Of a stretch of 64,000 nucleotides of DNA, positions 1,391 to 63,878 are shown one piece after another (positions within the stretch are counted from its first letter, which is position 1; the number at the start of each line of letters is the position of its first letter). The position numbers were made by a program, and so were the translations under genes. Location: positions 21,948,001 to 22,012,000 of the forward strand of contig NC_043002.1 of the NCBI RefSeq assembly GCF_006345805.1. Reading direction: 5' to 3'. Source of the DNA: Octopus sinensis. Taxonomy: Eukaryota. The notes beneath the pieces are model-generated. The model did no database searches. It was not told where the DNA came from and saw only the letters and a program-made list of their open reading frames with translations.

Positions 1391-2574
1391 TTATTGCTCA
1401 TAACGAAGCCAACCCGCTTTAGGCAGCAAACTGGTAGAATCGATTGACAGTTGAATGCATAAAATGCTCCATCTTATTTGTTCTAGCTCTCTACTCTCGT
1501 GTTCAAATCCCGCTTTAAACTACTTATCAGATGGTCACTGATTCAACTTTTCTTTGGAAGAAGAGTAGTTTTACGACGTCTGTTTTACTTTTCTTAACCT
1601 ATTCCTGTCATTCAGAAGCAAAAAAAAAAAAAAAATCTTTCTCACATTCATTTTTTATCAAGTAAATCCAGGTTATGAAACTACAAATGTTGTCGTTTAC
1701 CGGTACGTGTTTAACAAGGAAAGTGGAAATTGCATCAAATATATCGAATGAATATAGAGACAGTTGCAAACGTACAGAAATCTAATCACGAGATGCCTAC
1801 TTTTATTTTATGCAAGTATCGTGGGGATCGAAAAAATGCCCCAACGCAGAACGATGGGTTGGTGGAACTGTTAGAAGTGCAGGAAAAGATGTTTTGCGGC
1901 TTCTATTCTGGCTCTCTACGTTCTGAGAACGACACCTGAGACGACACTGATACCAAGCTATATCGGATCAAGCTGGTGTTCTCTCTTCTGGATAAACATC
2001 GATGCTGTGGAGAAAAGGAGAAATTTACAACGAATTTCTTCCTCGAAATATCTTGCCAAGGCTTACACATACACGTGTAAAATTCAGGGTCAGCTTTGAC
2101 AAATGGATGCTCTATTAAGCTTATCAGCCCTATAAAGCATGTGGAACATAACCAGGTTTGTTAGATACACCCTATGGAACTTGTATGACGTAATATGTTT
2201 TTCCATCGATTACACACACGCAAACACTCACAAAAACACGCACACACACACATACACTCACACACACACACACACACATATATATATGCGGCGGGGGCAG
2301 CCTGACCCTCCCTCAGTTACGATGACGAAGGTTCCAGTCGATTCCATCAACAGAACAACCTGCTCGTGAAAGTAATGAACGAATAATTGAGCCCTCGACA
2401 GACACGCGTACTCTTAATGAAGTTCTCAGAGAGGTTCAGCGTGACACACATTACGGGTACAACACATTTTTGTCAGCTGTATGGACCAGAATAATCTGAA
2501 ATAATGTTTTATTTTTGTTGTTTTTTTACGAATGACGTTTACATTTACAAAAGCGTCGGACAAAATATTTATTT

Positions 2575-2987
2575 ATTTATTACTCACAGGGGGCTAAACA
2601 TTGAGGGGACAAACAAGGACAGACAAAGGGATTAAGTCGATTACATCGACCCCAGTGCATAAATGGTACTTATTTAATCGACCCCGAAAGGATGAAAAGC
2701 AAAGTCAACCTCGGCGGAATTTGAACTTAGAACGTAACGGCAGATGAAATACCCATTTCTTTACTACCCACAAGGGGCTAAACACAGAGATGACAAACAA
2801 GGAAAGACAAAGAGATTAAGTCGATTATATCGACCCTAGTGCGTAACTGGTACTTATTTAATCGACCCCGAAAGGATGAAAGGCAAAGTCAACCTCGGCG
2901 GAATTTGAACTCCGAACGTAGCGGCAGACGAAATACCGCTAAGCATTTCGCCCGGCGTGCTAACGATTCTGCCAGTTCACCGCCTTT
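2575..2987 (-). mobile_element. SINE family C, head plus two tandem body units
   Basis: Reverse complement of the 5632-5864 element; the ~180-bp B-box-to-tail unit is present twice. Confidence 0.85.
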
Positions 2988-3019: not shown

Positions 3020-5500
3020 CATTTATTTTTATTCACCATGAAGGTTAAGACACAGAAGGGACAATACATAACAGACAAAACTTGGGTGTCAAAATGGTGT
3101 ATGGATGTTTGTTCCTTCTCGAGCCACGCCTAGCTCATGAGGCCGGTTTCCCGGTTTCCTTGGCGTATAGGTTCCCCACTTGGACGGGACGCCGATCCGT
3201 CGCTGGTGAGCTGCAAGATGCAGGAGGGAAGAATGAGAGAAAGTTGTGGCGAAAGAGTCAGCAGAAGTTTGCCATTACCTTCTGCTCGAGCCGCGTGGAG
3301 CTTAGGTGTTTCGCTCATAAACACACACATCGCCCGGTCTGAGATTCGAACCCGCGATCCCTCGACTGCGAGTCCGCTGCTGTAACTACTAGGCCATGTG
3401 CCTCCACGTATGGATAATGAAAAGGTGGATACAGGGACGCCCACAATCATGCATTATCAATGATCTTTTAGAATCACTGGTACTTTCGTTCAAGTCATCT
3501 CACACATGTAGTAAAGCGTACACTCTTGTGCGAACAGGTGTTGTCCTCCATCCCATTTTGCCAAACGAAGGAAGACAAGAACCTGCCAGAGAATGAGGAA
3601 ACTTATCACATTCAATCATCTTACTTACACATGTAGCAATGCATACCCTCTTCATTCACAGTACGAGACAGACAAAATGGGTTGAAACAACTTATGATTA
3701 AATAACTGGTGAAAAAGGAACATTGTATTATCTTTTGAGTTCGCTGGTGTGAATTTGTCTGTATGTTTAGCTAGAGTGGTTTATTTTCCCTCGGTGTTGC
3801 TGCTGGTGAAATATCTTCTGTGAATGGATTATATGTGGCTTGTGGGGTGTTTCTTTTGAAATAAGTGTAAAAATGTTTAGTAAAAGTTTCCTGTAATGGT
3901 CCGATGTCTCTTCGGTATTATTCTCTTAAGTCTGTGTATGAGATATTGTCTATGTATATAAATTATATATTTTCCGGTATGTTTGGGTATGTTGGGGGTG
4001 CATATGGGGGTAATATGTTTATTTTTATTCATTAGTTCTACTAAGTTGTTGTTGTTTGTGTTATGTTTATTACTGTACCTCGGAGTAATGGGTTAGATGC
4101 TTGAGTTTTGTGTGTTTGTGTGGGGGGGGGGGGCTTCATGCGGGTGTTTCGGTTGTTTTGCATGTTGTGTGTGTGGGTGGGTGGGTGGGGGTGGGGCGGT
4201 ATTCATCCTCTTGCATCTTTTTTTGACCTCCCTCCAGTCGCTCTCCGCTTCTTCAGATGCGGCTGGAGTTTTTTTTCTGGGGCGTCTCACTTTTGTTGTT
4301 TTGTCTCTTCTCGCGCCATTATTGGTGTGTATTGTTTTGTCGCGGTATTGGTTGTCTCTTTTTAGGTTCCTGTGTCTTTGTCGGTTTGTGTGGGGTTACT
4401 GTAGCGGGTACTATGGGTGCTTTTTATTGTGGGCATGCGGTTTTAATATGCCCTTTCATGCCGCACTTGTAGTACCTTGGCTTTTGTCCTCCCACGAATA
4501 CTCTCAGTGTGGTTTCGCCTGGCAGTAAAATTTGATTTAGCAATTATTCCAGGTCATGCTAGGTGGCCTGGATTACCTGTTCCAAGCATTGGCCTCACCA
4601 TTTCTGCTGGTGCAGCTTGGTGACTTGATGGATGGTGATATTATCCTCCAAGTTTAGCAGTACAGCTGCCACCAGCTACACCACGTCGATCTCCGGTGGG
4701 ATCGCCCCTATTTTAATTTTTGACATCTGCTTGCCTAAATATATTGGCAGCAGCACTAGTTCTATTGACTTTAGGGGAGTTATCGAATACCTCTTGGCTT
4801 TTTTTTTTCGGAGGTGAACCGTGTTTCGACGGTTCCGAAGCGCTTTCCTCTGGCTATGTATGTAATATTTTGTCACATCGTCTGTAGGCATATTTCGATT
4901 GCCTTTTTAGTAGCCGTTTCAATTTTTTCATTTTGAGTGACACGGTTTTGTACACTATTGTTTGCCTCTTTGTGATGTGTATTACTTCTCCAGGTGGGGC
5001 TAGTTTTACATTTGGTTTCCTCTTTTTGTATTAAACTCTTGTATTTCTCTAGTTCGTCTGGACCAACCTGCACTATTTCGCTCGTGATACCACGCGTAGT
5101 TCATCCTTCTATTACCATTCCGTGCTTCAACTCGGAGATCAGTTTCCTCATTTTCTGGCATGTTCTTGTCTTCCTTCGTTTGGCAAAATGGGATAGAGGA
5201 CAACACCTGATCGCACAATTCCTCCAAGAAGAAGTCTGGATCTACATATTGGGAGGCGTCAAATTCCATGTTGTACTGCTCGTGTAAAACTTTCCACAAA
5301 AGAAAACAGCTCGCCCCCAAACAGAGGGAACTCGCACAAAAAATGAACCCGCCAAAGCAGGCAATACGTCCAAAAGATACAGAAAACAGCAAAAGTTGTT
5401 TAACAAAAAACAAAACAAAAACAACGGTATTCCCCCAATGGAAAACTTACAATTTAAACAAGAGCATTGAAAAAATACGTCCTGAATCTATATATATACT
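3020..5500 (-). mobile_element. Decayed L1/Tx1-type ORF1 (gag-like zinc knuckle) element with no visible ORF2
   Basis: Frameshifted reading MEFDASQY..., SITPLKSIELVLLPIYLGKQ..., VFVGGQKPR-YYKCGMKGHIKTAC (knuckle 4433-4474, first Cys lost). C/A-rich downstream region, and a Tx1-like tail near 3020-3090. Boundaries approximate. Confidence 0.6.
3107..3407 (-). mobile_element. SINE family A, full length
   Basis: Homologous to 806-1125; 8-bp TSD GTATGGAT at 3099-3106 and 3408-3415. Confidence 0.9.
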
Positions 5501-5631
5501 CAGACATATTCTTGACCACTAGACAGAAGATAAACTGTTTTTACTTCAAATTTTTCAAATTTTAAAAAATTTTTAGTGATATTTGTTAAGATGAAATACA
5601 TCGAAACCGGTAAAATTTTTGTTTATATGAA

Positions 5632-5864
5632 GGCGGCGAGCTGGCAGAAACGTTAGCACGCCAGCCGAAATGCGTAGCTGTATTTCGTCTGCTGTTACGT
5701 TCTGAGTTCAAATTCCGCCGAGGTTGACTTTGCCTTTCATCCTTTCGGGGTCGATTAAATAAGTTCCAGTTACGCACTGGGGTCGATATAATCGACTTAA
5801 TCCGTTTGTCTGTCCTTGTTTGTCCTCTCTGTGTTTAGCCCCTTGTGGGTAGTAAAGAAATAGG
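5632..5864 (+). mobile_element. tRNA-derived SINE family C, monomer
   Basis: Head GGCGGCGAGCTGGCAGAAACGTTAG, B-box-like GAGTTCAAATTCC, tail ...TTAGCCCCTTGTGGGTAGTAAAGAAA; many copies in the window. Confidence 0.85.
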
Positions 5865-7060: not shown

Positions 7061-7837
7061 CTATATATATGTATAAAACACATACACACACACTGTGTGA
7101 TGTAGTATATGTGTGTGTGTGTACGCAGTTATTTTTTGCCCTTCTTTACCGAAGCGCTATGTTATGGGGACGTAAACAAACCAACATTGGTTGTCAAGTG
7201 CTGGTGGTATGGGGGCAGACACGAAGACAAACAGTATGCCTACATGTGACGGCCTCCACACAGTTTCTGTCAACGAAATTCACTCATAAGGCATTGGTCA
7301 CCACCAAGGCTATAGTGGAAAACACTAGCTCAAAGTACAATCTAGTGGAATTGATCCCGAAACTACATGGCTGCAAAGCGAACTTCTTAACTACACAGCC
7401 ACGCCTTCACTTTGTAATTTGACATTTTCTTCCTTATTGTATACTTTATGATAAATATAAGATCCCTGGTTCGATTCCATTGTTTGTCATCTTGGGTAAA
7501 TACCTTTTATAATAGATTCGAGGCGAGCCTAGGCCTTGTTAATAAAACTGGGTGGCCGGAAATAATATAGAAGCCGGTCGGCTAAATTGAACCTGTAATT
7601 CAAAGGTCCAACCATATCATATTGTGTTACTCTGATCCTACTACAATTCACATTAAGGATACACGTATCAGCGGGTTACTCAACCATTTCGCTCGCTAAT
7701 TCCATGTGGAGTTTGTTCAATTGATCGAAGAACTGTATGTTTGTATGTTGAAATCAACGGGAAACGCCATGATACATACATACATACATACATACATACA
7801 TACATACATAATACATACATACATACATACATATATA

Positions 7838-8165
7838 CTATTGCAGTCACTCTATCCAGACTACAAGTTCAGGTTTATACCTGTAATTATTGAGGCACTG
7901 GGATATGTAACACACTGCCGAAATACTAATTTTGAGAAATTAGGCTTCTTAAAATCAAAAATGAGAAAGATGATTCGAAGACTACAAATCCAATCCATCA
8001 CTGGAACTGTAAAAACCTGTAAAACTTTCCAAAAGTTTATCATTTAAGTATATATGAGCATATTTAGATATGCAAGTACATGATTGAGAATACATACTAT
8101 AAAACAAGAAATGCAAATTTGCATATATACATACATACAAAAATACCCTGTTTTTGATGTTGAAT
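7838..8165 (+). mobile_element. 5'-truncated RLE-type non-LTR retrotransposon (C-terminus plus 3' UTR) next to a (TACA)n array
   Basis: LLQSLYPDYKFRFIPVIIEALGYV...EKLGF...IRRLQIQSITGTVKTCKTF* (stop 8045-8047) resembles the end of restriction-like endonuclease domains; second copy at 26580-26902. Confidence 0.75.
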
Positions 8166-12327: not shown

Positions 12328-12758
12328 ATTCTTTTATTCTTTTATTATTTTATTCGTTTACTTGCTTCATGCTGGGGCACCGCTTTGAAGTGTTTTGCTT
12401 TTAGACGAACGAATCGACCCCAGTACACGGTTTTTAATATTAGTACTTATTCTATGGGTTTCTTTTACCGAACTGCTAAGTTACGGAGATGTAAACACAC
12501 AGACACCGGTTGTCAAGCGGTTGTGGGGGACAAACATAAGTACAAAGACACACACACACACACACACATACATACATACATACATACATACATAATACAT
12601 ACATACATACATACTACATACATACATACATGCATGTATACGACGGGCTTCGTTTAGTTTCCGCCTACCAAATTCACTCCCGGGGCCTTAGTAGAAGACA
12701 CTTGTCCAGGGTGCTGGAGCCATGTGGTCGGGAAGCAAGCTCCTGAACCACACAGCTA
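12328..12758 (-). mobile_element. SINE family B
   Basis: Reverse complement of 8308-8718, with a (CA)n/(TACA)n internal tract. Confidence 0.85.
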
Positions 12759-12930
12759 TCCATAAGGGTGCAGATGTAGTTGTGTGGTTCAGAAGCCTGC
12801 TTCCCAACCATATGGTTCCGGGACCCTCGGCAAGTGTCTTCTACTATGGCCTCGGGGGTGAATTTGGTAGGCGGAAACTAAAAGAAGCCCGTCGTATATA
12901 TGTATATATGTATTATGTATGCATGTATGT

Positions 12931-13942: not shown

Positions 13943-14056
13943 ACACGCATATATATATATATACGACAGGCTTCTTTCAGTTTCCGTCTACCAAATCCAC
14001 TCATAAGGCTTTAGTCGACCCCGACGCTGTAGCAGGAAATACTTGCTCAAGGTGCC
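13683..14056 (-). mobile_element. SINE family B lacking its head
   Basis: Reverse-complement homology to 8308-8718. Confidence 0.8.
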
Positions 14057-14353: not shown

Positions 14354-14440
14354 TTGATAACAGCAACATCAGCTGTTACAGCAGTCGCTTCACAACAACA
14401 ACAACGTGATGACGATGATGATGATGATGATGATGATGAC

Positions 14441-14472
<32 letters not shown>

Positions 14473-14761
14473 TGATGATGATAATGACGATGATGTTGAC
14501 GATGATGATGATGATGTTTACGATGATGTTGACGATGATGACGACGACGACGACGACGATGATCATGAAGATGATGATGATCATCATCAGCATCGCCCTC
14601 GTCGTCATCGTTATCTGTGCCGCCAAGGTCGCTGTCGTCGTTGCGTCATCATCGTCATCACCACCACCACCGCCACCACCACCACCACCACCGTCGTCGT
14701 CGTCGCCATCGATTTGGCTATCATCGTCGTCGCTGTCGTCGTCATCGTCATCAACATCATC

Positions 14762-14859
<98 letters not shown>

Positions 14860-14950
14860 TCTCATCGCGGCAATCATCCCCATCATCATCACCACCATCA
14901 TATCATCACCATCATCATCATCATCCACCATCATCATCATCATCATCATC

Positions 14951-14981
<31 letters not shown>

Positions 14982-14988
14982 CACATCG

Positions 14989-15019
<31 letters not shown>

Positions 15020-15188
15020 CATCATCATCATCATCATCTCATCATCATCATCATCGCGGTAATCATCACCATCATCATCACCATCATCATCACCATCATC
15101 ATCATCATATATCCTCATCATCATATCATCATCATCATCATCATCATATTCGCTCATCCCAGCAACAATCATCCCCATCATCATCCCA

Positions 15189-15242
<54 letters not shown>

Positions 15243-15497
15243 CATCATCATCGCGGTAATCATCACCATCATCATCACCATCACATCATCATCATCATCA
15301 TCATTATCATCATCATCATCGCGGCAATCATCCCCATCATCATCACCACCATCATCATCATCACCATCATCATCGTCGTCGTCATGTTCGTCATCAGGGG
15401 CAGCAGGAGTAGCCACAGCAGCAGCAGGCAGCGAAATCAGCTGTAACAAGCAACTGCTCCATAACCACAGTCCCAATAGCAGTAGAAGCTGCCGCCT

Positions 15498-15840: not shown

Positions 15841-16166
15841 GTCGTGTCCGCAAGTCCACTGAGCTGTGTGTGAGTGTATGTGTGTATATAAATATATATA
15901 TATAAATATATACACACACACATATATACACACACATATATACACATATACCCTGTGTGCGTGTGTATATACATATACATGTGTACACACCGTGTGTATG
16001 TACATCGAAATCCTACTACATGACACTATTAATTTTCTAGTAATACTATTACACCAAGGTGATACTCAGAGTAAATCAAATACGTGAAACGGTGAGTTGT
16101 ATTTCTTTCTACTACTACTGGCTTTCTTGTTTTTGTTGTTGTTGTTGTTATCATTGCTGTAGATAA

Positions 16167-16841
16167 GGCGGCGCGAGCTGGCGGAACAGTTAGCACGCCG
16201 GACGAAATGCACGGCACCATTTCGCCTGTCGTTGCGTTCTGAGTTCAAATGCCGTCGAGGTCGACTTTGCTTTTCATCCTTTCGGGATCAATTAATTATA
16301 AAGTACTAGCTGAGTACTGGGGCTCGATGTAATCGACTATCCCCCTCCCCCAAATTTCAGGCCTTGTGCCTATAGTAAAAAAAGATTATTATTATTATTT
16401 TCATAAGCACTCGTCCGTCGCTACGTCCTGAGTTCAAATTCCGCCGAGGTCGACTTTGCCTTTCATCCTTTTGGGGCCAATTTAATAAGTAACAGTTACG
16501 CTCTGGGGTCGATGCAATCGACTTAATCACTTCCCCTAAATTTGAGGCCTTCTGCTTCCAGTAGAAACAATTATTTTCCTATATATCTAACAGATTAGAC
16601 TTTTGGAAAAGAAATAAAGAATCCTAACAACGAGCTACAATTAACCTTTGATGCCAAGAACCCTTTTAAGTATCCTAGCTGCCCCTTTTAACACTGTTTT
16701 CCGGAGCTGTACTAAACTGGGTTTTATGCCCATTTCCTCAATTAATCTGTTCAGATCTTTAGGGATAGTTCCCAAACATTATTATTATTATTATTATTAT
16801 TATTTATTATTATTATTATTATTATTTTATTATTATTATCA

Positions 16842-16878
<37 letters not shown>

Positions 16879-17108
16879 CATCATTATTATTATTGTTATT
16901 TAATCAAAGCGTCGGACAAAATTACATAAAACCGTTTCGTCCGTCTCTACGTTCTGAGTTCAAATTCCACTGAGGTCGACTTTGTCTTTCATCCTTTCGG
17001 AGGTCAATAAGATAAGTACCAGCTGAGTACTGGGGGCCCGATGTAAGTGACTTACTCCCGCCCCGCAAAATTGCTGGCCTTGTACCAAGATTTGAATCCG
17101 TTATTATT
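16167..17108 (+). mobile_element. Three SINE C copies with the alternative (ATT)n-type tail (16167-16400, 16405-16577, 16932-17108)
   Basis: SINE C body followed by ...CCCCAAATTT(C/G)AGGCCTT..GTAGAAA..ATTATT instead of the Tx1-like tail. Confidence 0.8.
16580..16778 (-). mobile_element. 5'-truncated R4/Dong-like RLE LINE abutting an (AAT)n array
   Basis: 16641-16778 reads CLGTIPKDLNRLIEEMGIKPSLVQLRKTVLKGAARILKRVLGIKG*, a typical R4/Dong C-terminus; its 5' junction is the (ATT)n run at 16779-16900. Confidence 0.8.
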
Positions 17109-17616
17109 GATGTTGATGTCGTTGTTGTTGTTGTCGTTATTATTGTTGATGTTGTTTAAACCAATATTAACCTTAACCGAGTAGTACTTTATGCAAAATC
17201 ACTCCGGCCGTAACTATCATATGATATCAGGAATATCGTTACATACACACGCGCGCGTGCACGTATTAATATATTATTTTCTTCCCTGTTTCCCTGGGTG
17301 TATTTATGGTTTCGAGGGAGATTTCGTGTTTGGCTGTTATTTCTAGTAGGGCAACCGGGTTGCCATGTTTAGACCCTTCGCTGATATCTGCAAAAGATAA
17401 TGCGCATTCATCTCACAAGGTGTGTCACAGTGAGTGTGTGCGTGTGTATATGTATATGTGTACGTATGTATCTTTCTCTCTCTCTCTCTCTTTCTCTATG
17501 TTTATATACTTAAGCGCGCGCACACACATGCACACAGGCACATGTGGTATATATAGGCTTGCTAAGTTTGATAAATGCCATGCACGAAACTATCAGCACT
17601 TCAGACGCTTCTGTAG

Positions 17617-19353
17617 TTGACTATTGAACATACATACATACACACATACATACTACATACATACATACATACATACATACATACATTCATACATACATGC
17701 ATACATACATACATACATACGTACATACATACATACACATACATATATACATACATACATGCATGCATACATACATACATACATACATACGTACATACAT
17801 ACATACATACATACGTACATACATACATACGTACATACATACATGCGTACATACATACACATACATACATATATACATATTTATACCACCTTGGGCAAGT
17901 GTCTTCTGCTATAGCCTCGGGCCGACCAAAGCCTTGTGAGTGGATTTGGTAGACGGAAACTGAAAGAAGCCCGTCGTATATATGTATATGTATATATATA
18001 TGCGTGTGTGTGTTTGTGTGTCTGTGTTTGTCCCCCTAGCGTTGCTTGATAACCGATACTGGTGTGTTTATGTCCCCGCTACTTAGCGGTTCGGCAAAAG
18101 AGACCGATAGAATAAGTACTAGGCTTACAAAAGAATAAGTCCCGGGGTCGAGTTGCTCGATTAAAGGCGGTGCTCCAGCATGGCCGCAGTGAAATGACTG
18201 AAACAAGTAAAAGAGTATACATGTTTACATATATACGTATTCATGTACACATGTATGTATGTATGTATGTATGTATGTATATATATATGTATGTATGTAT
18301 ATGTATGTATATGTATGTATGTATGTATGCATGCATGCATATATGTATGAATGTGTATGTATGTATGTATGTATGTATGTATGCATGTATGTATGTATGT
18401 ATGTATGTATATGTATGTATGTATGTATGTGTGTGTATGTATGTATGGATGTATGTATGTATGTGTGTATGTATGTATATGTATGTATGTATGCATGTAT
18501 GTATGTATGCATGTATGTATGTATGCATGTATGTATGCATCTATGTATGGATGTATGTGTATGTATGTATGTATGTATGTATGTATGTATGTATGGATGT
18601 ATGTATGTATGCATGCATGTATATATGTATGTATGTGTATATATGTATGTATGCATGCATGCATGTATGTATGTATTTATGTACACATGTATGTATGTAT
18701 GTATGTATGCATGTATGTATGTATGTATGCATGTATGTATGTATGTATGTATGTATGCATGCATGTATGTATGTTTGTATGTATGTAAGTATGTATGTAT
18801 GTATGCATGTATGTATGTATGTATGCATGTATGTATGTATGTATGTATGTATGCATGCATGTATGTACGTATATGTATGCATGTATTATGGATGTATGTA
18901 TGTAAGTATGTTTGTATGTATGTAAGTATGTATGTATGTATATGTATGCATGCATTATGGATGTATGTATGTATGGTGTAGTAAGACGTTACCTCCCACT
19001 CACATGGTTCCGGGTTCAGTCGGCCGAGTATCTTCTACTATACCCTGGAGCCAACCAAAGGCTGGTGGGTCGATTTGGTAAACTTAGGATGAAAGAAGCA
19101 AGCCCGTCGTATACATATGTGAATGTGTGTGTGTGCGTCACACCACCGCTTGACAGTCGGTGTTGGTGTGTTTACTTCCCCGTAACCTAGCGGTTCGGAA
19201 AAAAAGAAATTGATTGAATAAGTACCAGGTTTAAAAGTTTAAAAAAAAATAATCTTCGGACCGATTCATTTAACTAAAAATCCTTCAAGCAAGGCAACAG
19301 TCAGACTGAAACAATTAAATGGTTAAAGGTGCATACATACATAGATACATACA

Positions 19354-20794: not shown

Positions 20795-20829
<35 letters not shown>

Positions 20830-20830
<1 letters not shown>

Positions 20831-21332
20831 ACTTGAAGAGGAAAGTGAGAGTAGAGAGGCAAGTTTTGTCTAGTGAATGTTTTAAAAAAAGATGGGTGAA
20901 TGTAGCAAGGATGGCACGTATGAATGACGAAGCCACCTTGACTATGATTCTATGAACCGTAAAAATTAATACAGAGAGTTGATATTTGCAAAAAAAAAAG
21001 AAATATAACATGTGACATCATTGACCGAGGTTACCGTGGTCTTTTCCGTAGGCTTTTCTTTCCACGGGTAAACTTCACCTGTCCTCCTCTTTACACTTCA
21101 TATTGACATTTCTGTGATAACGATCCCTATTGATCAATTTTTTCTTTTCCCTTTTTTCTTCCCCCACCCACTTTTTAAAAAAAATTTTATTCCCCCCTTT
21201 TTTGTCCTCTTTCTTTCCCTTTACGATCCCTTTTGATCGAAAACCAAATCGCCTTTTTTTTACCCCCCAAAGAAAAGCTCTACCTTGTAATTTGTCCTGT
21301 CTGTGTGCAGCCCTGTGTGGCTAATAAAGAAA
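20830..21332 (+). mobile_element. 5'-truncated L1/Tx1-clade LINE 3' end flanked by (TATC)n
   Basis: YHLKRKVRVERQVLSSECFKKRWVNVARMARMNDEATLTMIL* (stop 20953-20955), ~380-bp 3' UTR ending AATAAAGAAA, TATC repeats on both sides. Clade call rests on the F..RW C-terminal pattern. Confidence 0.6.
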
Positions 21333-21334
21333 CA

Positions 21335-21430
<96 letters not shown>

Positions 21431-21435
21431 AGTCA

Positions 21436-21479
<44 letters not shown>

Positions 21480-21632
21480 TTTGTCTGTCTGTCTACCTAC
21501 CTACCTACATACCTACCTACCTACCTACCTACCCACCTACCCACCTACCTACCTACCTACCCACCTACCTACCTACCTACCTACCTACCTACCTACCTAC
21601 CTACCTACCTACCTACCTACCTTCCTACTTAC

Positions 21633-21685
<53 letters not shown>

Positions 21686-21686
21686 A

Positions 21687-21722
<36 letters not shown>

Positions 21723-21877
21723 TTTGTCTGTCTGTCTACCTGCCTACCTACCTACCTAATACCTACCTACCCACCCACATACCCGACCTACCTACCTACC
21801 TAACTACCTACCACCTACCTCCTTTTCCTACCATACCTTCCTACTACATCATCATCTATCTATCTCGTCTATATCTC

Positions 21878-21955
<78 letters not shown>

Positions 21956-22333: not shown

Positions 22334-22363
22334 TATACATACACACATACATATAGGGGGGGG

Positions 22364-22529
22364 TGACCACTACGTGGACATCCATTATGCTAGAAGTAGA
22401 TCCGCTATGGTCTTACCACTAAGAAGGAATGTTCTCAAGAAAAATTTAGCAAACGCCCAACATTCCTTTCTTAGTGGTAAGACCATAGTGGATCTACTTC
22501 TAGCATAATGGATGTCCACGTAGTGGTCA
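22364..22529. repeat. Near-perfect fold-back, 70-bp arms, 25-nt loop
   Basis: 22364-22433 versus 22459-22529 differ by one substitution and one indel. Confidence 0.95.
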
Positions 22530-23078
22530 TAAACACTTATATGTATGTAATGTAATTTTTTCTGAATCTTCAGATTTTAATATGCTAGACCACTGGTTTT
22601 AAATTGATATTGATCAAATTAATATTTAATTTTCACCCTTATTATTTTAAATTATATATATATATATATATTTCCAAATGTGCTTTTACAACCTATTATT
22701 TATTTAGTTTTATGTGCTTCCAAAGTCATTGTTCTCTCGAAAGTTCATAAATTCTTATATCTGCATATAAACGTGTGTGTGTGTGTAAGTGTGTGGTGTA
22801 TACATATATTCTAAAATAGCATCTGACGAATACAAACTGGATATACAGGTGACCCAGTTTACTCCTAGATCGGTGCTCTACATGCTAAAAATGGCAGCCA
22901 AATCTATACCTGACTGTCTCTTAATAACAAAAGATAACGTAGATATCGATGTGCAGTGTCAAGGCTTGAATTCTTTTGAAAATAGATTAGCTCACTCTAA
23001 CGCCACCTACATGCAAAAGAACCAATTATTTGTATATTTGGAAATGATACAACAGCACACACACACGCGCGCGCGCGT

Positions 23079-26229: not shown

Positions 26230-26579
26230 GGAGACAGAAGAAAGTCCAAAAGAAAAGGAAGACGGAGGAAACAAAATCGCCAACAATCGGCATGTAGTTA
26301 CATTTTGGAAATTATCGCGGACGGATAAAAATTCTTTATGGATAAGTTAACACTACCATTGGTTCATGTTAACAGAGAAATCTCTCAACAGTTATTTTGC
26401 CTGTCACATGGAATATTAGAATAAAAACAATTTTACATTAAACTCAAAATTTACTCAATATTTTTGTAGAGTACGAATTTATTTTTCTTTAGCAAGAATA
26501 TGCATGTATGTATATTTGTATGTATGTATGTATGTATGTATGTATGTATGTATGTATGTATGTATGTATGTATGTATGT

Positions 26580-26902
26580 CATTATTCAGTTTTATTTCAA
26601 GATTCTTTGCTAATAGAGATAGAGCCGGTTTCTAACCTAGATCCAAGGCTCCTTCATTGGAATTTTAACATCAATAACAGGGTATTTTTGTATGTGTATA
26701 TGTATGTTTATGTGCAGATTTGTATTTGTTTCATGTACGTATTCTCATGCATATTGTTGCATATACATTTAAATGATAAACTTCTGGAAAGTCTTACAGA
26801 TTTTTACAGTCCCAGTGATGGAATGGATCTGTAGTCTTCGAATTAGCTTTCTTCTTTCTGGTTTTGAGAAGCCTAATTTCTCAAGATTAGGATTCAAGCA
26901 TT
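26580..26902 (-). mobile_element. Second RLE LINE 3' fragment, flanked on both sides by (CATA)n
   Basis: NLEKLGFSKPERRKLIRRLQIHSITGTVKICKTFQKFII* plus a complete-looking 3' UTR ending ...AAAACTGAATAATGA; a further UTR fragment at ~26950-27020. Confidence 0.8.
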
Positions 26903-27027
26903 GTATGTATGTATGTATGTATGTATGTATGTATGTATGTATGTATGTGTAGATTTGTATGCTCTGTTTTACGTATGTATTCTCATGCATATAGCTGCAT
27001 GTCTAGACATGGCATTATCTATGTTTG

Positions 27028-27059
<32 letters not shown>

Positions 27060-27399
27060 TGTATGTATGTATGTATGTATGTATGTATGCATGTGTGTAT
27101 GTATGTATGTATGCATATATGTATATGTATGCATGAATGTATGTATGGTGGCTACAACTCGATTTCGGTTAATGCCATTGCTTGATTATTCTCTTAAGGT
27201 AGAATAGATGTAGGTTTTCATGGCAACGCCAGGTGTCTCTTGCATTAAGCGTTCAATGATTACTGTTCACACTGACACATGTCTTCATTCCATTATGGGA
27301 TTTTTCATTGTTTTGCCTTTTTCAACTATGCTCAGCTATATTATGCAACACATAATAGAGATGTTAAAAATCAAGTGATACTCGCGCCTGCAGCTTTGT

Positions 27400-27540: not shown

Positions 27541-28644
27541 ACTCACAGATGTTGGATGGCAGCTCTACCTGACAGGGGATCTAACAAAAACCATCCTCCT
27601 TACCTTGCTGGCTTGGTAGGGTTGCTGGTTCAGAGACAGTGAAAGCGAAAGAGGGCTTGGTAGAGTTGCTGGTTCAGAGACACTGAAGGTGAAAGAGATG
27701 GCCTGAGACGTGTCACAAAATGAAAGAAGGAACACTCACTATTTAAAATTAGACTGAAATATATATAACTATTGCATGGAATCTGTCTAAATATATTATT
27801 TCGAGGTTTTGGCAGCTGACTGGACTGGAGCAACGAGAAATAATGTGTTTTGCTCAAAAGCACATGCTGCTGGGTATTGAACTCACAACTTTAGGATCAT
27901 GAGCTTACCACTAAGCCATGCGCCTTCACAAATATATGTAATATAGTGTAATAAATACACATTCTTTCTAAATTTATCTTATGGTTTGTTGGCCACTCCT
28001 CAGGGAAGAGTAACCCAGTTTCCTTCTACAGTCAACAGCAGAGATGAACTGTTTATAAAACAGTTATGACTTAAGTTATTACTGTGATGGAGCTCGATCT
28101 GAAAGCGGAAGGGTATATATATTTATGAAAACATTTATATTCTATCGGCTTACATATGGAATTTTGGGCAAATACTATTTCTATAGCTTCGGGTCCATCC
28201 GTACGGTGTGAGGGAAAATGAGTTGGCAAAACCATATAGAAGCCGTTGGATGGACTGTATCTAATTCAAAGATACAACTTTGTCTCACACTGCGTAACGC
28301 TGATTCTGCTTGAATTACTCTAAGAGAGACCATATCTGTGAAGTACTCAGCCATTTTGACTTTGACGTTAAGTCTGTGGGTAATAAAGCGAGTTGATCGA
28401 ATAACTCAATTCTCATCCTTAGAATCGATGGAGGACCATCCATCCATCCATCCTCCTCACATACGTGTTTTTTTTTGTGCCATTTTCAAGCCTAGCCAGG
28501 CTCATGGGCCCGGTTTCCCGGTTTCTGTGGGGTATGTGTTCCTCCCAGCTGGACGGGACGCCAGTCCATCGCAGCGTTACTCAAGAAACAAGAAGAGAGA
28601 TTGAGAGAAAGTTGTGGCGAAAGAGTACAACTAGGGTCGCCCCT

Positions 28645-28799
28645 ACATGGTCCCTGGTTTATTCCCACTGCGTGGCACCTTGGGCAAGTGACTCCTTCTC
28701 TATATCTCGGGCCTTGTGAGTGGATTTGGTAGACGAAACTGAAAGAAGCCCGTCGTATGTATGTATGTATGTATGTATGTATGTATGTATGTATGTATG

Positions 28800-30185: not shown

Positions 30186-30692
30186 GTAAGAGAGCAGTGC
30201 ATGCCATCAAAGTGACACTGGAGTAAATACACGAAGCCCAGTATACCCATCATGACTACCTGTCTGATAAGAGTACACCAGGCACATGCATCACAACCAT
30301 ATGTGCGCAACATGGTGATCTCATATCAAAATAAACAGTGCATGACCTTGCAGGTGGGGCCCAGTTAGAATTTTCTTCTTGTCGGTAATCCATCCCGCTC
30401 AAAAGGTCCCTGAAGAGGGATTGTTTAAGGATGTTGAACGAACCCCCCATGCTTCCAAAGGTGAATTAACCAAACCTCTAAGAATTCCTTTCAACACACA
30501 GCTATGTTGCTCCCCACTACTTCTGTTCGTGATCAGAGATGTACATATTGTCAGCCATTAAGGGACATGGTCAACTGATTAAGGTCAAACTACTGACAAG
30601 CAAATCTGTGGTATTGAGCAGAATAATTGCTGCAGCCCATCTTTTATACCAAGACAAAACAATGTACACGATAACACTTCCAATCAGTTAAG
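30186..30692 (-). mobile_element. Family D element, 5'-truncated, between (AAT)n arrays; a 23-bp 3'-end-only copy lies at 30758-30780
   Basis: Shared 3' end GCATGCACTGCTCTCT(C/T)AC followed by (AAT)n. Confidence 0.85.
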
Positions 30693-30778: not shown

Positions 30779-30810
<32 letters not shown>

Positions 30811-30844
30811 GTAGTAGTAGTAGTAGTAGTAGTAGTAGAAGTAG

Positions 30845-51770: not shown

Positions 51771-52311
51771 ATAATTGCTCTGATGCAGTACTAGGCAATG
51801 GCTCTCATGGATTCTAATCTTATCTGATTGGAAATATTATCATGTACATTGTTTTGTCTTGGTATAAAAGATGGGCTACAGCAAATATTCTGCTCAATAC
51901 CACAGATTTGCTTGTCAGTTGTTTGACCATAACCAGCAGAGCATATCCCTTAGTGGCTGACGATGTATGCATCTCTGATCACTAGCAGAAGTAGTGGGGG
52001 AGCATCATAGCCGTGTGTTGAGAGGGATTCTTTGGAGTTTGAATAATTCACCTCTGGAAACACGGGTGTTTCGTTCATCACCCTTAAACAACCCTTATTC
52101 AGGTCCCTTTTGAGCGGGTTGGGCTACTCAATCTCAAGAAAATTCTAACTGGACCCCACCTGCAAGGTTATGCACCGTTTATCAGCGCAGATGTGGTTGT
52201 GATGCTTGTGCCTGGTGTACCCTTATCAGGCGGGTAGTCATGATGGATATATTGGGCTTCGTATAATTGTACCCCAGTGTCACTTTGATGGCATGCGATG
52301 CTTTCTCACTC
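51771..52311 (+). mobile_element. Family D element, apparently full length (~540 bp), followed by (AAT)n
   Basis: Starts ATAATTGCTCTGATGCAGTAC, ends CTCACTC-AATAATAAT; no A/B box recognised. Confidence 0.85.
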
Positions 52312-52574
52312 AATAATAATACTAATAATTACCATTATTATTAAATTTTTTTTTGGTACATGGGCAGCTTGGAGGAGGTGAGGATGAGTCGATTACATTG
52401 ATCCCAGTGTTCAACTTGTACCTATTTTATCGATCCCAAAAGAATGAAAGGTAAAGTCGACCTCGGCGGAATTTGAACTCAGAACGTAGCGACGGGCGAA
52501 ATACTGCTAAGCATTTTGTCCGGCATGCTAATGATTCTGCCAGTTTGCAGCCTTAATAATAATAATAATAATAA

Positions 52575-63367: not shown

Positions 63368-63459
63368 TACACTGTATATATAATGAATAATATATAGTCT
63401 ATTGACTAGTTTTTCTAAAGGCTAGGCGACAGTGGTAAAAAATTTCTAAATAATATTTT

Positions 63460-63878
63460 GTGGCTGTGTGGTAAGTAGCTTGCATACAAGCCACATTGTT
63501 CCGGGTTCAGTCCCACTGCGTGGCACCTTGGGCAAGTGTGTATTCTACTATAGCCTCGGGCTGACCAAAGCCTTGTGAGTGGATTTGGTAGACGGAAACT
63601 GAAAGAAGCCCGTCGTATATATGTATATATATGTATATGTATATGTATGTGTGTGTGTATATGTTTGTGTGTCTGTGTTTGTCCCCCCAACATCACTTGA
63701 CAACCGATGCTGGTGTGTTTACGTCTCCGTAACTTAGCGGTTCGGTAAAAGAGCCCGATAGAATAAGTACTAGGCTTTTCAAAGAATAAGTCCTGGGGTC
63801 GATTTGCTCGACTAAAGGCGGTGTTCCAGCATAGCCACAGTCAAATGACTGAAACAAGTAAAAGAGTATAAAAGAGTA
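63460..63878 (+). mobile_element. SINE family B, full length
   Basis: Close match to 8308-8718. Confidence 0.9.

What the first reader, a model, noticed from the sequence alone, without database searches (positions are those of the whole stretch)
16580..16900. Dong/R4-like fragment at (TAA)n: several retroelements partition different microsatellite motifs in one locus
Seen: a Dong-like end at AAT, an RLE family at TACA (7.8 kb, 26.6 kb), a Tx1-like end at TATC (20.8 kb) and family D at AAT/GAT/TAC. Known: Dong targets TAA repeats. Inference: a community of microsatellite-specialist retroelements, each using a different simple repeat as a safe harbour and possibly regenerating it. This is my best candidate for an undescribed system in the window.
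Basis: inference. Interest (0 to 1): 0.75.

Follow-up and report, generated by a model that had tools for sequence, protein, structure and literature searches.

The report
Dong-like retroelement stub in TAA repeat
The flagged stretch is the dead, cut-off tail end of an old and very abundant Dong-type jumping gene that landed in the (ATT)n tail of a SINE. Two other retroelement families nearby each stick to their own simple repeat, which is a real pattern but a kind already known from insects, fish and a snail.

Summary
Observation confirmed; interpretation partly supported; not a new system.

**The flagged fragment (family X).** Window 16576-16776, minus strand, holds the last 44 codons, the stop codon and a 65-nt 3'UTR of a roughly 3.3 kb non-LTR retrotransposon.
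- X has thousands of decayed copies, about 84% alike.
- Its C-terminal domain is an R2-type CCHC plus restriction-like endonuclease. A profile hits R2 at E 7e-14, and the fold matches R2 structures at TM 0.70-0.73.
- This copy sits antisense in the (ATT)n tail of a SINE.
- (AAT)n follows the 3' end in 29 of 38 held copies, against a 0.7% background.
- (AAT)n precedes 11 of 27 truncated 5' ends, against a 1% background.
- (TAA)n precedes 21 of 31 exact full-length 5' ends genome-wide.
- This is Dong-like (TAA)n targeting.

**Family Y (7.8 and 26.6 kb).** Its C-terminus is homologous to X, and its copies sit in (ATAC)n repeats.

**Family Z (20.8 kb).** Its copies sit in (TATC)n repeats. The "Tx1-like" label could not be tested.

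**Across families.** No family was seen on another's motif. The partition is not strict, though: X, another element (family E) and the SINE all share the TAA/TTA repeat.

**Novelty.** Microsatellite-specific non-LTR elements are long known, including Dong in a snail, and Dong-R4 LINEs are already annotated in octopus. I rate this a new member of a known kind. The possibly new points are the ATAC and TATC targets and the use of SINE tails as landing sites.

The parts
16160..16399 (+). tRNA-like SINE copy 1 with its (ATT)5 tail (16385-16399)
   Evidence: Reads directly. 36 copies with intact 3' ends in held sequence end in GATTATT(ATT)n.
16400..16569 (+). SINE copy 2, 5'-truncated. Its (ATT)n tail is the target that X entered.
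   Evidence: The SINE terminus runs straight into ATTATT and then the reverse complement of the X 3' end.
16570..16575 (-). Two AAT units: the 3' tail of X, which is also the proximal remnant of the SINE tail
   Evidence: In other copies this position carries a long (AAT)n.
16576..16640 (-). 3'UTR of family X, about 65 nt
   Evidence: About 85% identical to 30 other copies, all ending at the same point.
16641..16776 (-). Last 44 codons plus stop of the X ORF (C-terminal end of the RLE domain), 5'-truncated here
   Evidence: Open frame. 80% identical to the C-terminus of L023:883-1623. In other copies the homology continues past this point.
16778..16900 (-). (AAT)41 on the X strand: target repeat at the 5' junction, the distal part of the SINE tail
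   Evidence: TRF row. The same arrangement appears at 11 of 27 truncated copies.
16931..17160 (+). SINE copy 3 with a mixed GTT/ATT/GAT tail
7772..7838 (+). (ATAC)17 at the 5' junction of Y copy 1
7840..8150 (+). Family Y copy 1: last 68 codons (stop at 8045-8047) and part of the 3'UTR
   Evidence: Translation. Scores 17.6 bits against the X-type profile at positions 283-330; the best of 500 shuffles scores 3.1.
26499..26579 (-). (CATA)20 3' tail of Y copy 2
   Evidence: Genome-wide, the Y 3' 20-mer (3150 hits) is followed by ATAC-type repeat.
26580..26901 (-). Family Y copy 2, 5'-truncated, with a complete 3' end
   Evidence: (at least 2628 candidates, about 84% identical, alignments ending at the terminus).
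26902..27147 (-). (TACA)n array at the 5' side of Y copy 2. It holds a third, about 90-bp Y 3'UTR scrap at 27005-26915.
20795..20830 (+). (TATC)9 at the 5' junction of Z
20831..21334 (+). Family Z, a 5'-truncated 3' end (short ORF end plus about 380-nt 3'UTR)
   Evidence: At least 3213 candidates, 90-95% identical. Most copies continue upstream, so the window copy is truncated at an internal TATC.
21335..21955 (+). (TATC)n 3' tail/target of Z, partly degenerated to ACCT
   Evidence: Genome-wide, the Z 3' 19-mer (5669 hits) is followed by TATC repeats in about 90 of 100 listed sites.

Best explanation
Window 16576-16776 (minus strand) is a dead, 5'-truncated copy of an old and very abundant non-LTR retrotransposon, family X, of the R2 group. 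X has a reverse transcriptase followed by a CCHC motif and a restriction-like endonuclease, and is most probably of the Dong/R4 clade. It integrates specifically into (TAA)n microsatellites.

**Likely history of this copy.**
1. A tRNA-like SINE inserted on the plus strand and carried an (ATT)n tail.
2. On the opposite strand that tail reads (AAT)n, which is X's target.
3. X's endonuclease nicked the array near the SINE body.
4. The (UAA)n end of the X RNA paired with the nicked strand and primed reverse transcription.
5. Synthesis stopped after about 200 nt, and the cDNA was joined to the rest of the array.

The result is SINE, then two repeat units, then the X stub in antisense, then 41 repeat units.

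**Shown versus inferred.** The homology, the endonuclease type and the junction statistics are shown. The enzymatic steps are inferred from what is known of R2 and Dong.

**Neighbouring families.**
- Family Y is related to X at its C-terminus and does the same in (ATAC)n.
- Family Z, of unknown clade, does the same in (TATC)n.
For: **Identity of X.**
- The window fragment is 80% identical over 41 residues to the C-terminus of a 247-aa ORF of copy L023.
- That ORF has 10,221 homologues. The full-length ones are 1100-1140 aa, with RVT_1 in the middle and no APE domain.
- An alignment of 36 homologues keeps C-x2-C...H-x4-C, RH, PD, D and K motifs.
- The alignment's profile hits R2 proteins over their CCHC and RLE region at E 7e-14.
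- The AlphaFold model (pLDDT 94) matches R2Tg, R2Pm and R2Bm at TMq 0.70-0.73, and next PD-(D/E)XK cap-snatching nucleases.

**Target of X.**
- (AAT)n is at the 3' junction in 29 of 38 copies, against 0.7% background.
- (AAT)n is at the 5' junction of truncated copies in 11 of 27, against 1.0%. The opposite-strand motif appears in only 1-2.
- All held full-length copies with a visible 5' terminus are preceded by (AAT)n.
- Genome-wide, 21 of 31 exact hits to the 5'-terminal motif are preceded by (TAA)n, most of them in the phase seen in the held copies.
- Four SINE tails in held sequence carry X in antisense.

**Y and Z.**. Same-strand 3' ends lie within 1-1.5 kb of each other far more often than expected: Y shows 3 pairs against about 0.06 expected, and Z shows 7 against about 0.15 (my tally of the coordinates).

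**Literature.** Dong targets TAA, including in a snail. Dong-R4 is the abundant RLE-type LINE group in octopus.
Against: - Assignment to the Dong/R4 clade rather than another RLE clade (HERO, NeSL, R2) rests on architecture, target and published annotation. No RT tree with labelled references could be built.
- No intact copy of X was seen. The longest open frame was 279 aa, so no activity can be claimed.
- About 40% of apparent 5' breakpoints show no repeat. Some may be later rearrangements, but this was not resolved.
- The 5'-junction evidence for Y is limited to three copies in the window plus the coordinate clustering.
- The tallies for searches were made by eye on the first 100 listed places.
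Confidence: 0.85

Rival explanations
1. The (AAT)n arrays are only RNA-templated 3' tails of X that later expanded. X inserts anywhere, and there is no target specificity.
For: Many non-LTR elements carry simple-repeat tails without target specificity. RTE elements of octopus and Lepidoptera are examples. 29 of 38 3' ends carry the repeat, which a tail alone would explain.
Against: - A tail cannot explain (AAT)n upstream of 5' ends: 11 of 27 truncated copies at varied truncation points, all held full-length copies with a visible 5' terminus, and 21 of 31 genome-wide 5' termini.
- In the window, the 5'-side array belongs to a pre-existing SINE tail on the other strand, and only two units lie at X's own 3' end.
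Confidence: 0.07
2. Chance adjacency: the genome is so rich in simple repeats (15.7% of this window) that any repeat family will often lie next to one.
For: The window holds 139 arrays of at least 30 bp. ACAT-type repeats alone cover about 1.4% of positions per strand.
Against: - Background probabilities of the specific, strand-specific motif within 30-45 nt are 0.7-3%. Observed rates are 40-90%.
- Each family shows its own motif and never the other two.
Confidence: 0.02
3. X is an RLE-type element of a clade other than Dong/R4 (for example HERO or NeSL) that acquired (TAA)n specificity independently.
For: Some HERO families and the NeSL-related Togen families are microsatellite-specific. No labelled Dong or R4 reference could be compared here.
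Against: - Published octopus annotations list Dong-R4 as the abundant RLE-type group: 5 recently active families with 1129 insertions, against 13 insertions for Hero and 1 for R2.
- TAA is the classic Dong target, also in a mollusc.
Confidence: 0.2

Closest known systems
Dong (Bombyx mori), DongAg (Anopheles gambiae), DongBg (Biomphalaria glabrata), of the R4 clade
   Same: RT followed by a CCHC motif and a restriction-like endonuclease. Insertion into (TAA)n with the repeat on both sides. Present in a mollusc (PMC3812793).
   Different: Membership by RT phylogeny was not tested. X is an old, decayed family of thousands of copies. Here it is seen using SINE tails as targets, which the papers I read do not report.
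R2 (R2Bm, R2Tg, R2Pm; solved structures 8gh6, 9dou, 9nl2, 9nl3)
   Same: The C-terminal CCHC and RLE domain is homologous in sequence (E 7e-14) and in fold (TMq 0.70-0.73). R2's RT is the closest RT among solved structures.
   Different: R2 targets a single site in 28S rDNA, whereas X targets a microsatellite. Sequence identity is only about 15-18%.
Waldo (R1 clade), which targets ACAY microsatellites
   Same: Family Y sits in the same kind of repeat (ATAC/ACAT) with the repeat at both ends.
   Different: Waldo has an APE-type endonuclease. Y's C-terminus is homologous to the RLE-type family.
Kibi (TC)n and Koshi (TTC)n of the Tx1 clade; Togen (TG)n near NeSL
   Same: LINE families each tied to one microsatellite motif, as Z is to (TATC)n.
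   Different: Z's clade is unknown. The papers I read do not list a TATC/GATA target.
RTE-derived microsatellite families (Lepidoptera; RTE-2_OV of octopus)
   Same: Simple repeat directly at the element's 3' end, and shared flanks among microsatellite loci.
   Different: There the repeat is a tail, not a target. X, Y and Z also carry the repeat at their 5' junctions.

Membership tests
RLE-bearing non-LTR retrotransposons (R2 group) | Reverse transcriptase domain | tested here: met
   Decayed copies give weak RVT_1 hits. Full-length homologues of the X C-terminus carry RVT_1 at E 1e-21 to 1e-31. Their closest solved RT is that of R2.
RLE-bearing non-LTR retrotransposons (R2 group) | CCHC motif and PD-(D/E)XK restriction-like endonuclease C-terminal to the RT, with no APE domain | tested here: met
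   Conserved C, C, H, C, RH, PD, D and K columns. Profile against R2 at E 7e-14. Fold match to R2 at TMq 0.70-0.73. No Exo_endo_phos hit in 1100-aa homologues.
Dong / R4 clade | RT-domain phylogeny grouping with Dong, R4 and Rex6 rather than R2, NeSL, HERO or CRE | not testable with these tools
   No labelled reference sequences were reachable. There is only indirect support from published octopus annotations.
Dong / R4 clade (Dong lineage) | Specific insertion into (TAA)n, with the repeat at both junctions | tested here: met
   3' junction 29 of 38 and 5' junction 11 of 27, against about 1% background. Held full-length 5' ends with a visible terminus are all preceded by the repeat, and 21 of 31 are genome-wide.
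Same RLE-type superfamily, for family Y | C-terminal peptide homologous and colinear to the end of the RLE-bearing ORF | tested here: met
   17.6 bits at profile positions 283-330, against at most 3.1 bits for 500 shuffles. Colinear phmmer hits to P0076 and P0077. Only 68 residues are available.
L1-Tx1 clade, for family Z | APE endonuclease plus RT in ORF2, and RT phylogeny with Tx1 | not testable with these tools
   The window copy holds only the ORF end and the 3'UTR. Most copies continue upstream, but no more genome letters could be fetched.
Microsatellite-specific non-LTR elements (sense of Kojima and Fujiwara 2004) | The same repeat motif, on the same strand, at both junctions of many independent copies | tested here: met
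   X. Z: 3' about 90 of 100, and 7 of 8 copies truncated at the same internal TATC abut (TATC)n. Y: 3' tails, three window copies and clustered same-strand ends; its 5' evidence is the weakest.

The most novel reading that the evidence does not exclude
In this SSR-rich cephalopod-type genome, simple repeats and repeat-specific retroelements may feed each other.
- SINE, and possibly RTE-type, (ATT)n tails create thousands of arrays.
- Dong-like LINEs use those arrays on the opposite strand. Each insertion splits an array and adds a new templated tail.
- Sister RLE families have switched to ATAC, and an unrelated or unknown LINE to TATC.
- If so, a large share of the genome's unusual microsatellite load is made and maintained by these elements, and the RLE families offer a natural series of target switches within one protein family.
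Probability: 0.3. Interest if true: 0.55.

Novelty: new member of a known kind. Interest (0 to 1): 0.3.

Why it matters
The finding explains one piece of a very repeat-rich locus and shows that much of the simple-repeat content here is tied to retroelement ends.

**Value for annotation.**
- Microsatellite flanks in this genome are often transposon termini. This matters for marker design and for repeat masking.
- X, Y and Z can be recognised from their terminal sequences and repeat motif.

**Value for mechanism.** X and Y are two related restriction-like-endonuclease families with different repeat targets (TAA and ATAC). They would be a convenient pair for asking which residues set target choice.

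It does not open a new class of system.

Tried and rejected
- **Single-sequence PDB searches** with decayed ORF pieces found nothing meaningful. Only the profile and the fold search worked.
- **Pfam on fragments** gave only sub-threshold RVT_1 and zf-RVT hits.
- **Pairwise BLASTP of Y against X** mis-aligned. The profile was needed.
I did not try other routes to cut loci. I used whole-genome pattern counts and the listed matches instead.
- **The look-up of sequencing runs** gave only small shares with coded organisms. Nothing was learned.
- **The search of earlier findings** returned nothing for this window.
- **Cluster names** of homologues were empty, so no clade label came from databases.
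- **Ten larger window ORFs** gave no Pfam family, so no gene context was found.
- **The reading that the element lies on the plus strand** with (ATT)n as its tail was rejected. Other copies continue past 16776 and carry the repeat on the other side.

Full report
**What is at the coordinates**

The window is piece C6:21948001-22012000 of a 2.72 Gb genome. The genome is very rich in simple repeats: 139 arrays of at least 30 bp cover 15.7% of the window. The repeat families and the literature point to an octopus-type genome; I did not confirm the species.

At 16778-16900 there is a 41-unit ATT array. To its left lies about 200 bp of unique-looking sequence. That sequence is a repeat family, here called X, with more than 2000 first-look candidates that are about 84% identical to the window copy.

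**Orientation and anatomy**

- In 28 of 30 other copies the ATT repeat lies on the opposite side of the shared sequence, at window position 16570.
- Homology in those copies continues past window position 16776, for up to about 3 kb.
- The element therefore lies on the minus strand and the window copy is 5'-truncated.
- On that strand, 16644-16775 is an open frame of 44 codons ending in a stop at 16641-16643.
- A 65-nt 3'UTR and two AAT units follow.
- Directly beyond those units is the body of a tRNA-like SINE on the plus strand. That SINE's normal terminus is GATTATT followed by (ATT)n.

The simplest history is that X entered the (ATT)n tail of that SINE close to the SINE body, in antisense. 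This left two units on one side and 41 on the other. Three further SINE tails in the held loci carry X in the same antisense way.

**What X is**

- Decayed copies contain pieces of a reverse transcriptase.
- Copy L023 contains a 247-aa open frame covering the C-terminal region. The window peptide is 80% identical to its end.
- That ORF finds 10,221 homologues among 1.84 billion representatives.
- The full-length homologues are 1100-1140 aa, with RVT_1 in the middle, a zinc-binding motif after it and no APE domain.
- An alignment of 36 homologues conserves a C-x2-C...H-x4-C motif and RH, PD, D and K positions.
- The alignment's profile matches the CCHC and endonuclease region of solved R2 proteins at E 7e-14.
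- An AlphaFold model (pLDDT 94) matches R2Tg, R2Pm and R2Bm at TMq 0.70-0.73. The next best matches are PD-(D/E)XK cap-snatching endonucleases.

X is therefore an RLE-bearing non-LTR element of the R2 group. No copy seen was intact; the longest open frame was 279 aa among 150 scored places, out of 39,611 first-look candidates.

**Is it Dong/R4?**

I could not build a tree with labelled references, so clade membership is not proven. Three things point there:
- the architecture;
- the TAA target, which is the classic Dong target and is also found in the snail element DongBg (PMC3812793);
- published octopus annotations, in which Dong-R4 is the abundant RLE-type LINE group while Hero and R2 are rare (PMC13282606; PMC8967140). 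A full-ORF Dong consensus is also reported from the O. bimaculoides repeat library (PMC9115989).

**Target specificity of X**

I used a strand-specific classifier of 15-mers.

| Junction | Sample | With (AAT)n/(TAA)n | Background |
|---|---|---|---|
| 3' end, within 30 nt | 38 non-redundant held copies | 29 | 0.7% |
| 5' breakpoint of truncated copies | 27 | 11 | 1.0% |
| 5' terminus, held full-length copies with a visible terminus | 4 (L047, L048, L049, L051) | all | – |
| 5' terminus, genome-wide exact pattern hits | 31 | 21 | – |

- At the truncated 5' breakpoints the opposite-strand motif appears only once or twice.
- The held full-length copies begin with TTAAC..GAACCCATAAC (L047 is about 25 nt shorter at its 5' end).
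- Most of the 21 genome-wide hits show the same phase as the held copies.
- Eight of the other ten genome-wide hits share a different upstream sequence, so they are a subfamily with a longer leader.
- The pattern's own control (the pattern read backwards) gave 30 hits against 118 at one mismatch, so only exact matches are used here.

A tail-only model cannot explain repeats at 5' ends, and chance cannot explain rates of 40-75% against 1%.

**The other families**

Family Y:
- Three pieces lie in the window: 7840-8150 on the plus strand, 26901-26580 on the minus strand, and a 90-bp scrap at 27005-26915 inside the same array.
- All are bordered on both sides by ACAT-type repeats reading ATAC/TACA on the element's strand.
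- Its last 68 codons align colinearly with the extreme C-terminus of the X-type protein family, at 17.6 bits against at most 3.1 for 500 shuffles.
- Genome-wide, its 3' terminal 20-mer occurs 3150 times (control 3). It is followed by ATAC-type repeat: 33 of the first 100 read exactly ATACATAC, and most others are degenerate versions (my tally).

Family Z:
- Z is the 504 bp at 20831-21334, between (TATC)9 and a 620-bp TATC array.
- It has at least 3213 candidates at 90-95% identity.
- Its 3' 19-mer occurs 5669 times. In the first 100 places, 52 are followed by exactly ATATCTATCTATCTAT, and about 90 by TATC-like repeat.
- Upstream of the window copy's first base, about 90 of 100 copies continue with a common sequence ending in AAGTATC. 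The window copy is therefore truncated at an internal TATC.
- Of 8 other copies that break at that spot, 7 have TATC repeats there. This looks like microhomology joining to the target array.
- Z's clade is unknown. The window copy has only the end of an ORF and a long 3'UTR, and I could not fetch full copies.

Clustering of 3' ends, for both Y and Z:
- Same-strand 3' ends lie within 1-1.5 kb of each other far more often than copy density predicts.
- Y shows 3 pairs against about 0.06 expected. Z shows 7 against about 0.15 (coordinates, my tally).
- This fits repeated entry into the same array, as seen in the window at 26.9-27.0 kb.

**How strict is the partition?**

In the samples, X was never at ACAT or TATC, Y never at AAT or TATC, and Z never at AAT or ACAT. 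But the TAA/TTA repeat is shared:
- A further family, E, ends in ..CTCTCACTCAAT followed by (AAT)n on the same strand as X. It includes a 25-bp scrap inside an array at about 30.8 kb.
- The SINE has (ATT)n at its 3' end and often at its 5' end, on the other strand.
- The SINE's tails also vary (ATT, ATC, GTT, ACT, CTT).

Many ACAT- and AT-type arrays in the window are internal to another SINE-like family, F. Not every array is a target or a tail.

**Comparison with what is known**

- Most RLE-bearing clades are target-specific, and some target microsatellites (PMC4640811).
- A review lists Dong on TAA, Waldo on ACAY, Mino on AC, Kibi on TC and Koshi on TTC (PMC3812793).
- Togen targets TG.
- Several specialists, each with its own repeat, is therefore an established pattern, first laid out in the 2004 cross-genome screen that these papers cite.

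What I did not find in the papers I read:
- an RLE-type family on ATAC;
- any family on TATC;
- the use of SINE tails as Dong targets;
- any statement on microsatellite targeting in cephalopods.

These are modest additions, and Repbase may already hold them.

**Verdict**

The 'Tx1-like' and 'regenerating' parts remain untested. I rate it a new member of a known kind, with interest 0.3.

Noticed in passing
window 16160-17160: Three copies of the same tRNA-like SINE lie head to tail on the plus strand, each followed by an ATT-type array. SINE 5' ends elsewhere also abut (ATT)n (for example window 51.6 and 52.5 kb, read on the other strand). The SINE itself may therefore enter ATT arrays.
   Followed up: partly
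window 30188-30390 (-), 52130-52330 (+), 30800-30825: Family E: an element ending ..GCATGCACTGCTCTCTCACTCAAT followed by (AAT)n, on the same strand and repeat as X. It includes a 25-bp scrap embedded in an array. It may be another TAA specialist or a non-autonomous partner of X.
   Followed up: partly
window 30490-30692 (+); L034:4980-5241 and 5447-5700: Family G ends ..CACTTCCAATCAGTTAAG directly followed by a (TTA)n/(TTG)n tail, with an open frame running to the end. This resembles the published description of octopus RTE elements, whose ORF runs into a microsatellite. It may be the SINE's LINE partner and a source of ATT arrays.
   Followed up: no
window 63400-63860, 17890-18200, 28560-28760, 12640-12800, 13950-14050: An abundant SINE-like family F has an internal AT/GT/ATGT microsatellite between two conserved halves. 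Many ACAT-type arrays in the window are expansions of this internal repeat.
   Followed up: partly
window 22359-22530: A near-perfect palindrome of about 170 bp (arms about 80 bp) next to an (AT)n array, looking like a MITE or hairpin element.
   Followed up: no
window 2571-2937: A tandem duplication of a 184-bp unit (89% match). The unit contains a SINE-like 3' end whose terminal motif (..CCCTTGTGGGTAGTAAAGAAATA on the other strand) resembles the 3' end of family Z. This suggests a LINE-SINE pair sharing a tail region.
   Followed up: no
window 14407-15396: About 1 kb of TGA/TCA trinucleotide repeat (221 units in one TRF row). Its flanks matched no repeat family in the held sequence.
   Followed up: no
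genome C1:159.91-160.01 Mb and C9487: Five X 5' ends with identical 18-nt upstream sequence lie within 100 kb in alternating orientation, plus one on an unplaced contig. This is a recent segmental duplication or an assembly duplicate. Loci L002 and L003 (C8443 and C2:150.7 Mb) likewise have identical flanks.
   Followed up: no
genome-wide: About a quarter of exact hits to the X 5' motif are preceded not by (TAA)n but by a shared AGTAAACGCTGTAAAAAC. This is a subfamily with a longer 5' leader whose own 5' junction was not seen.
   Followed up: no
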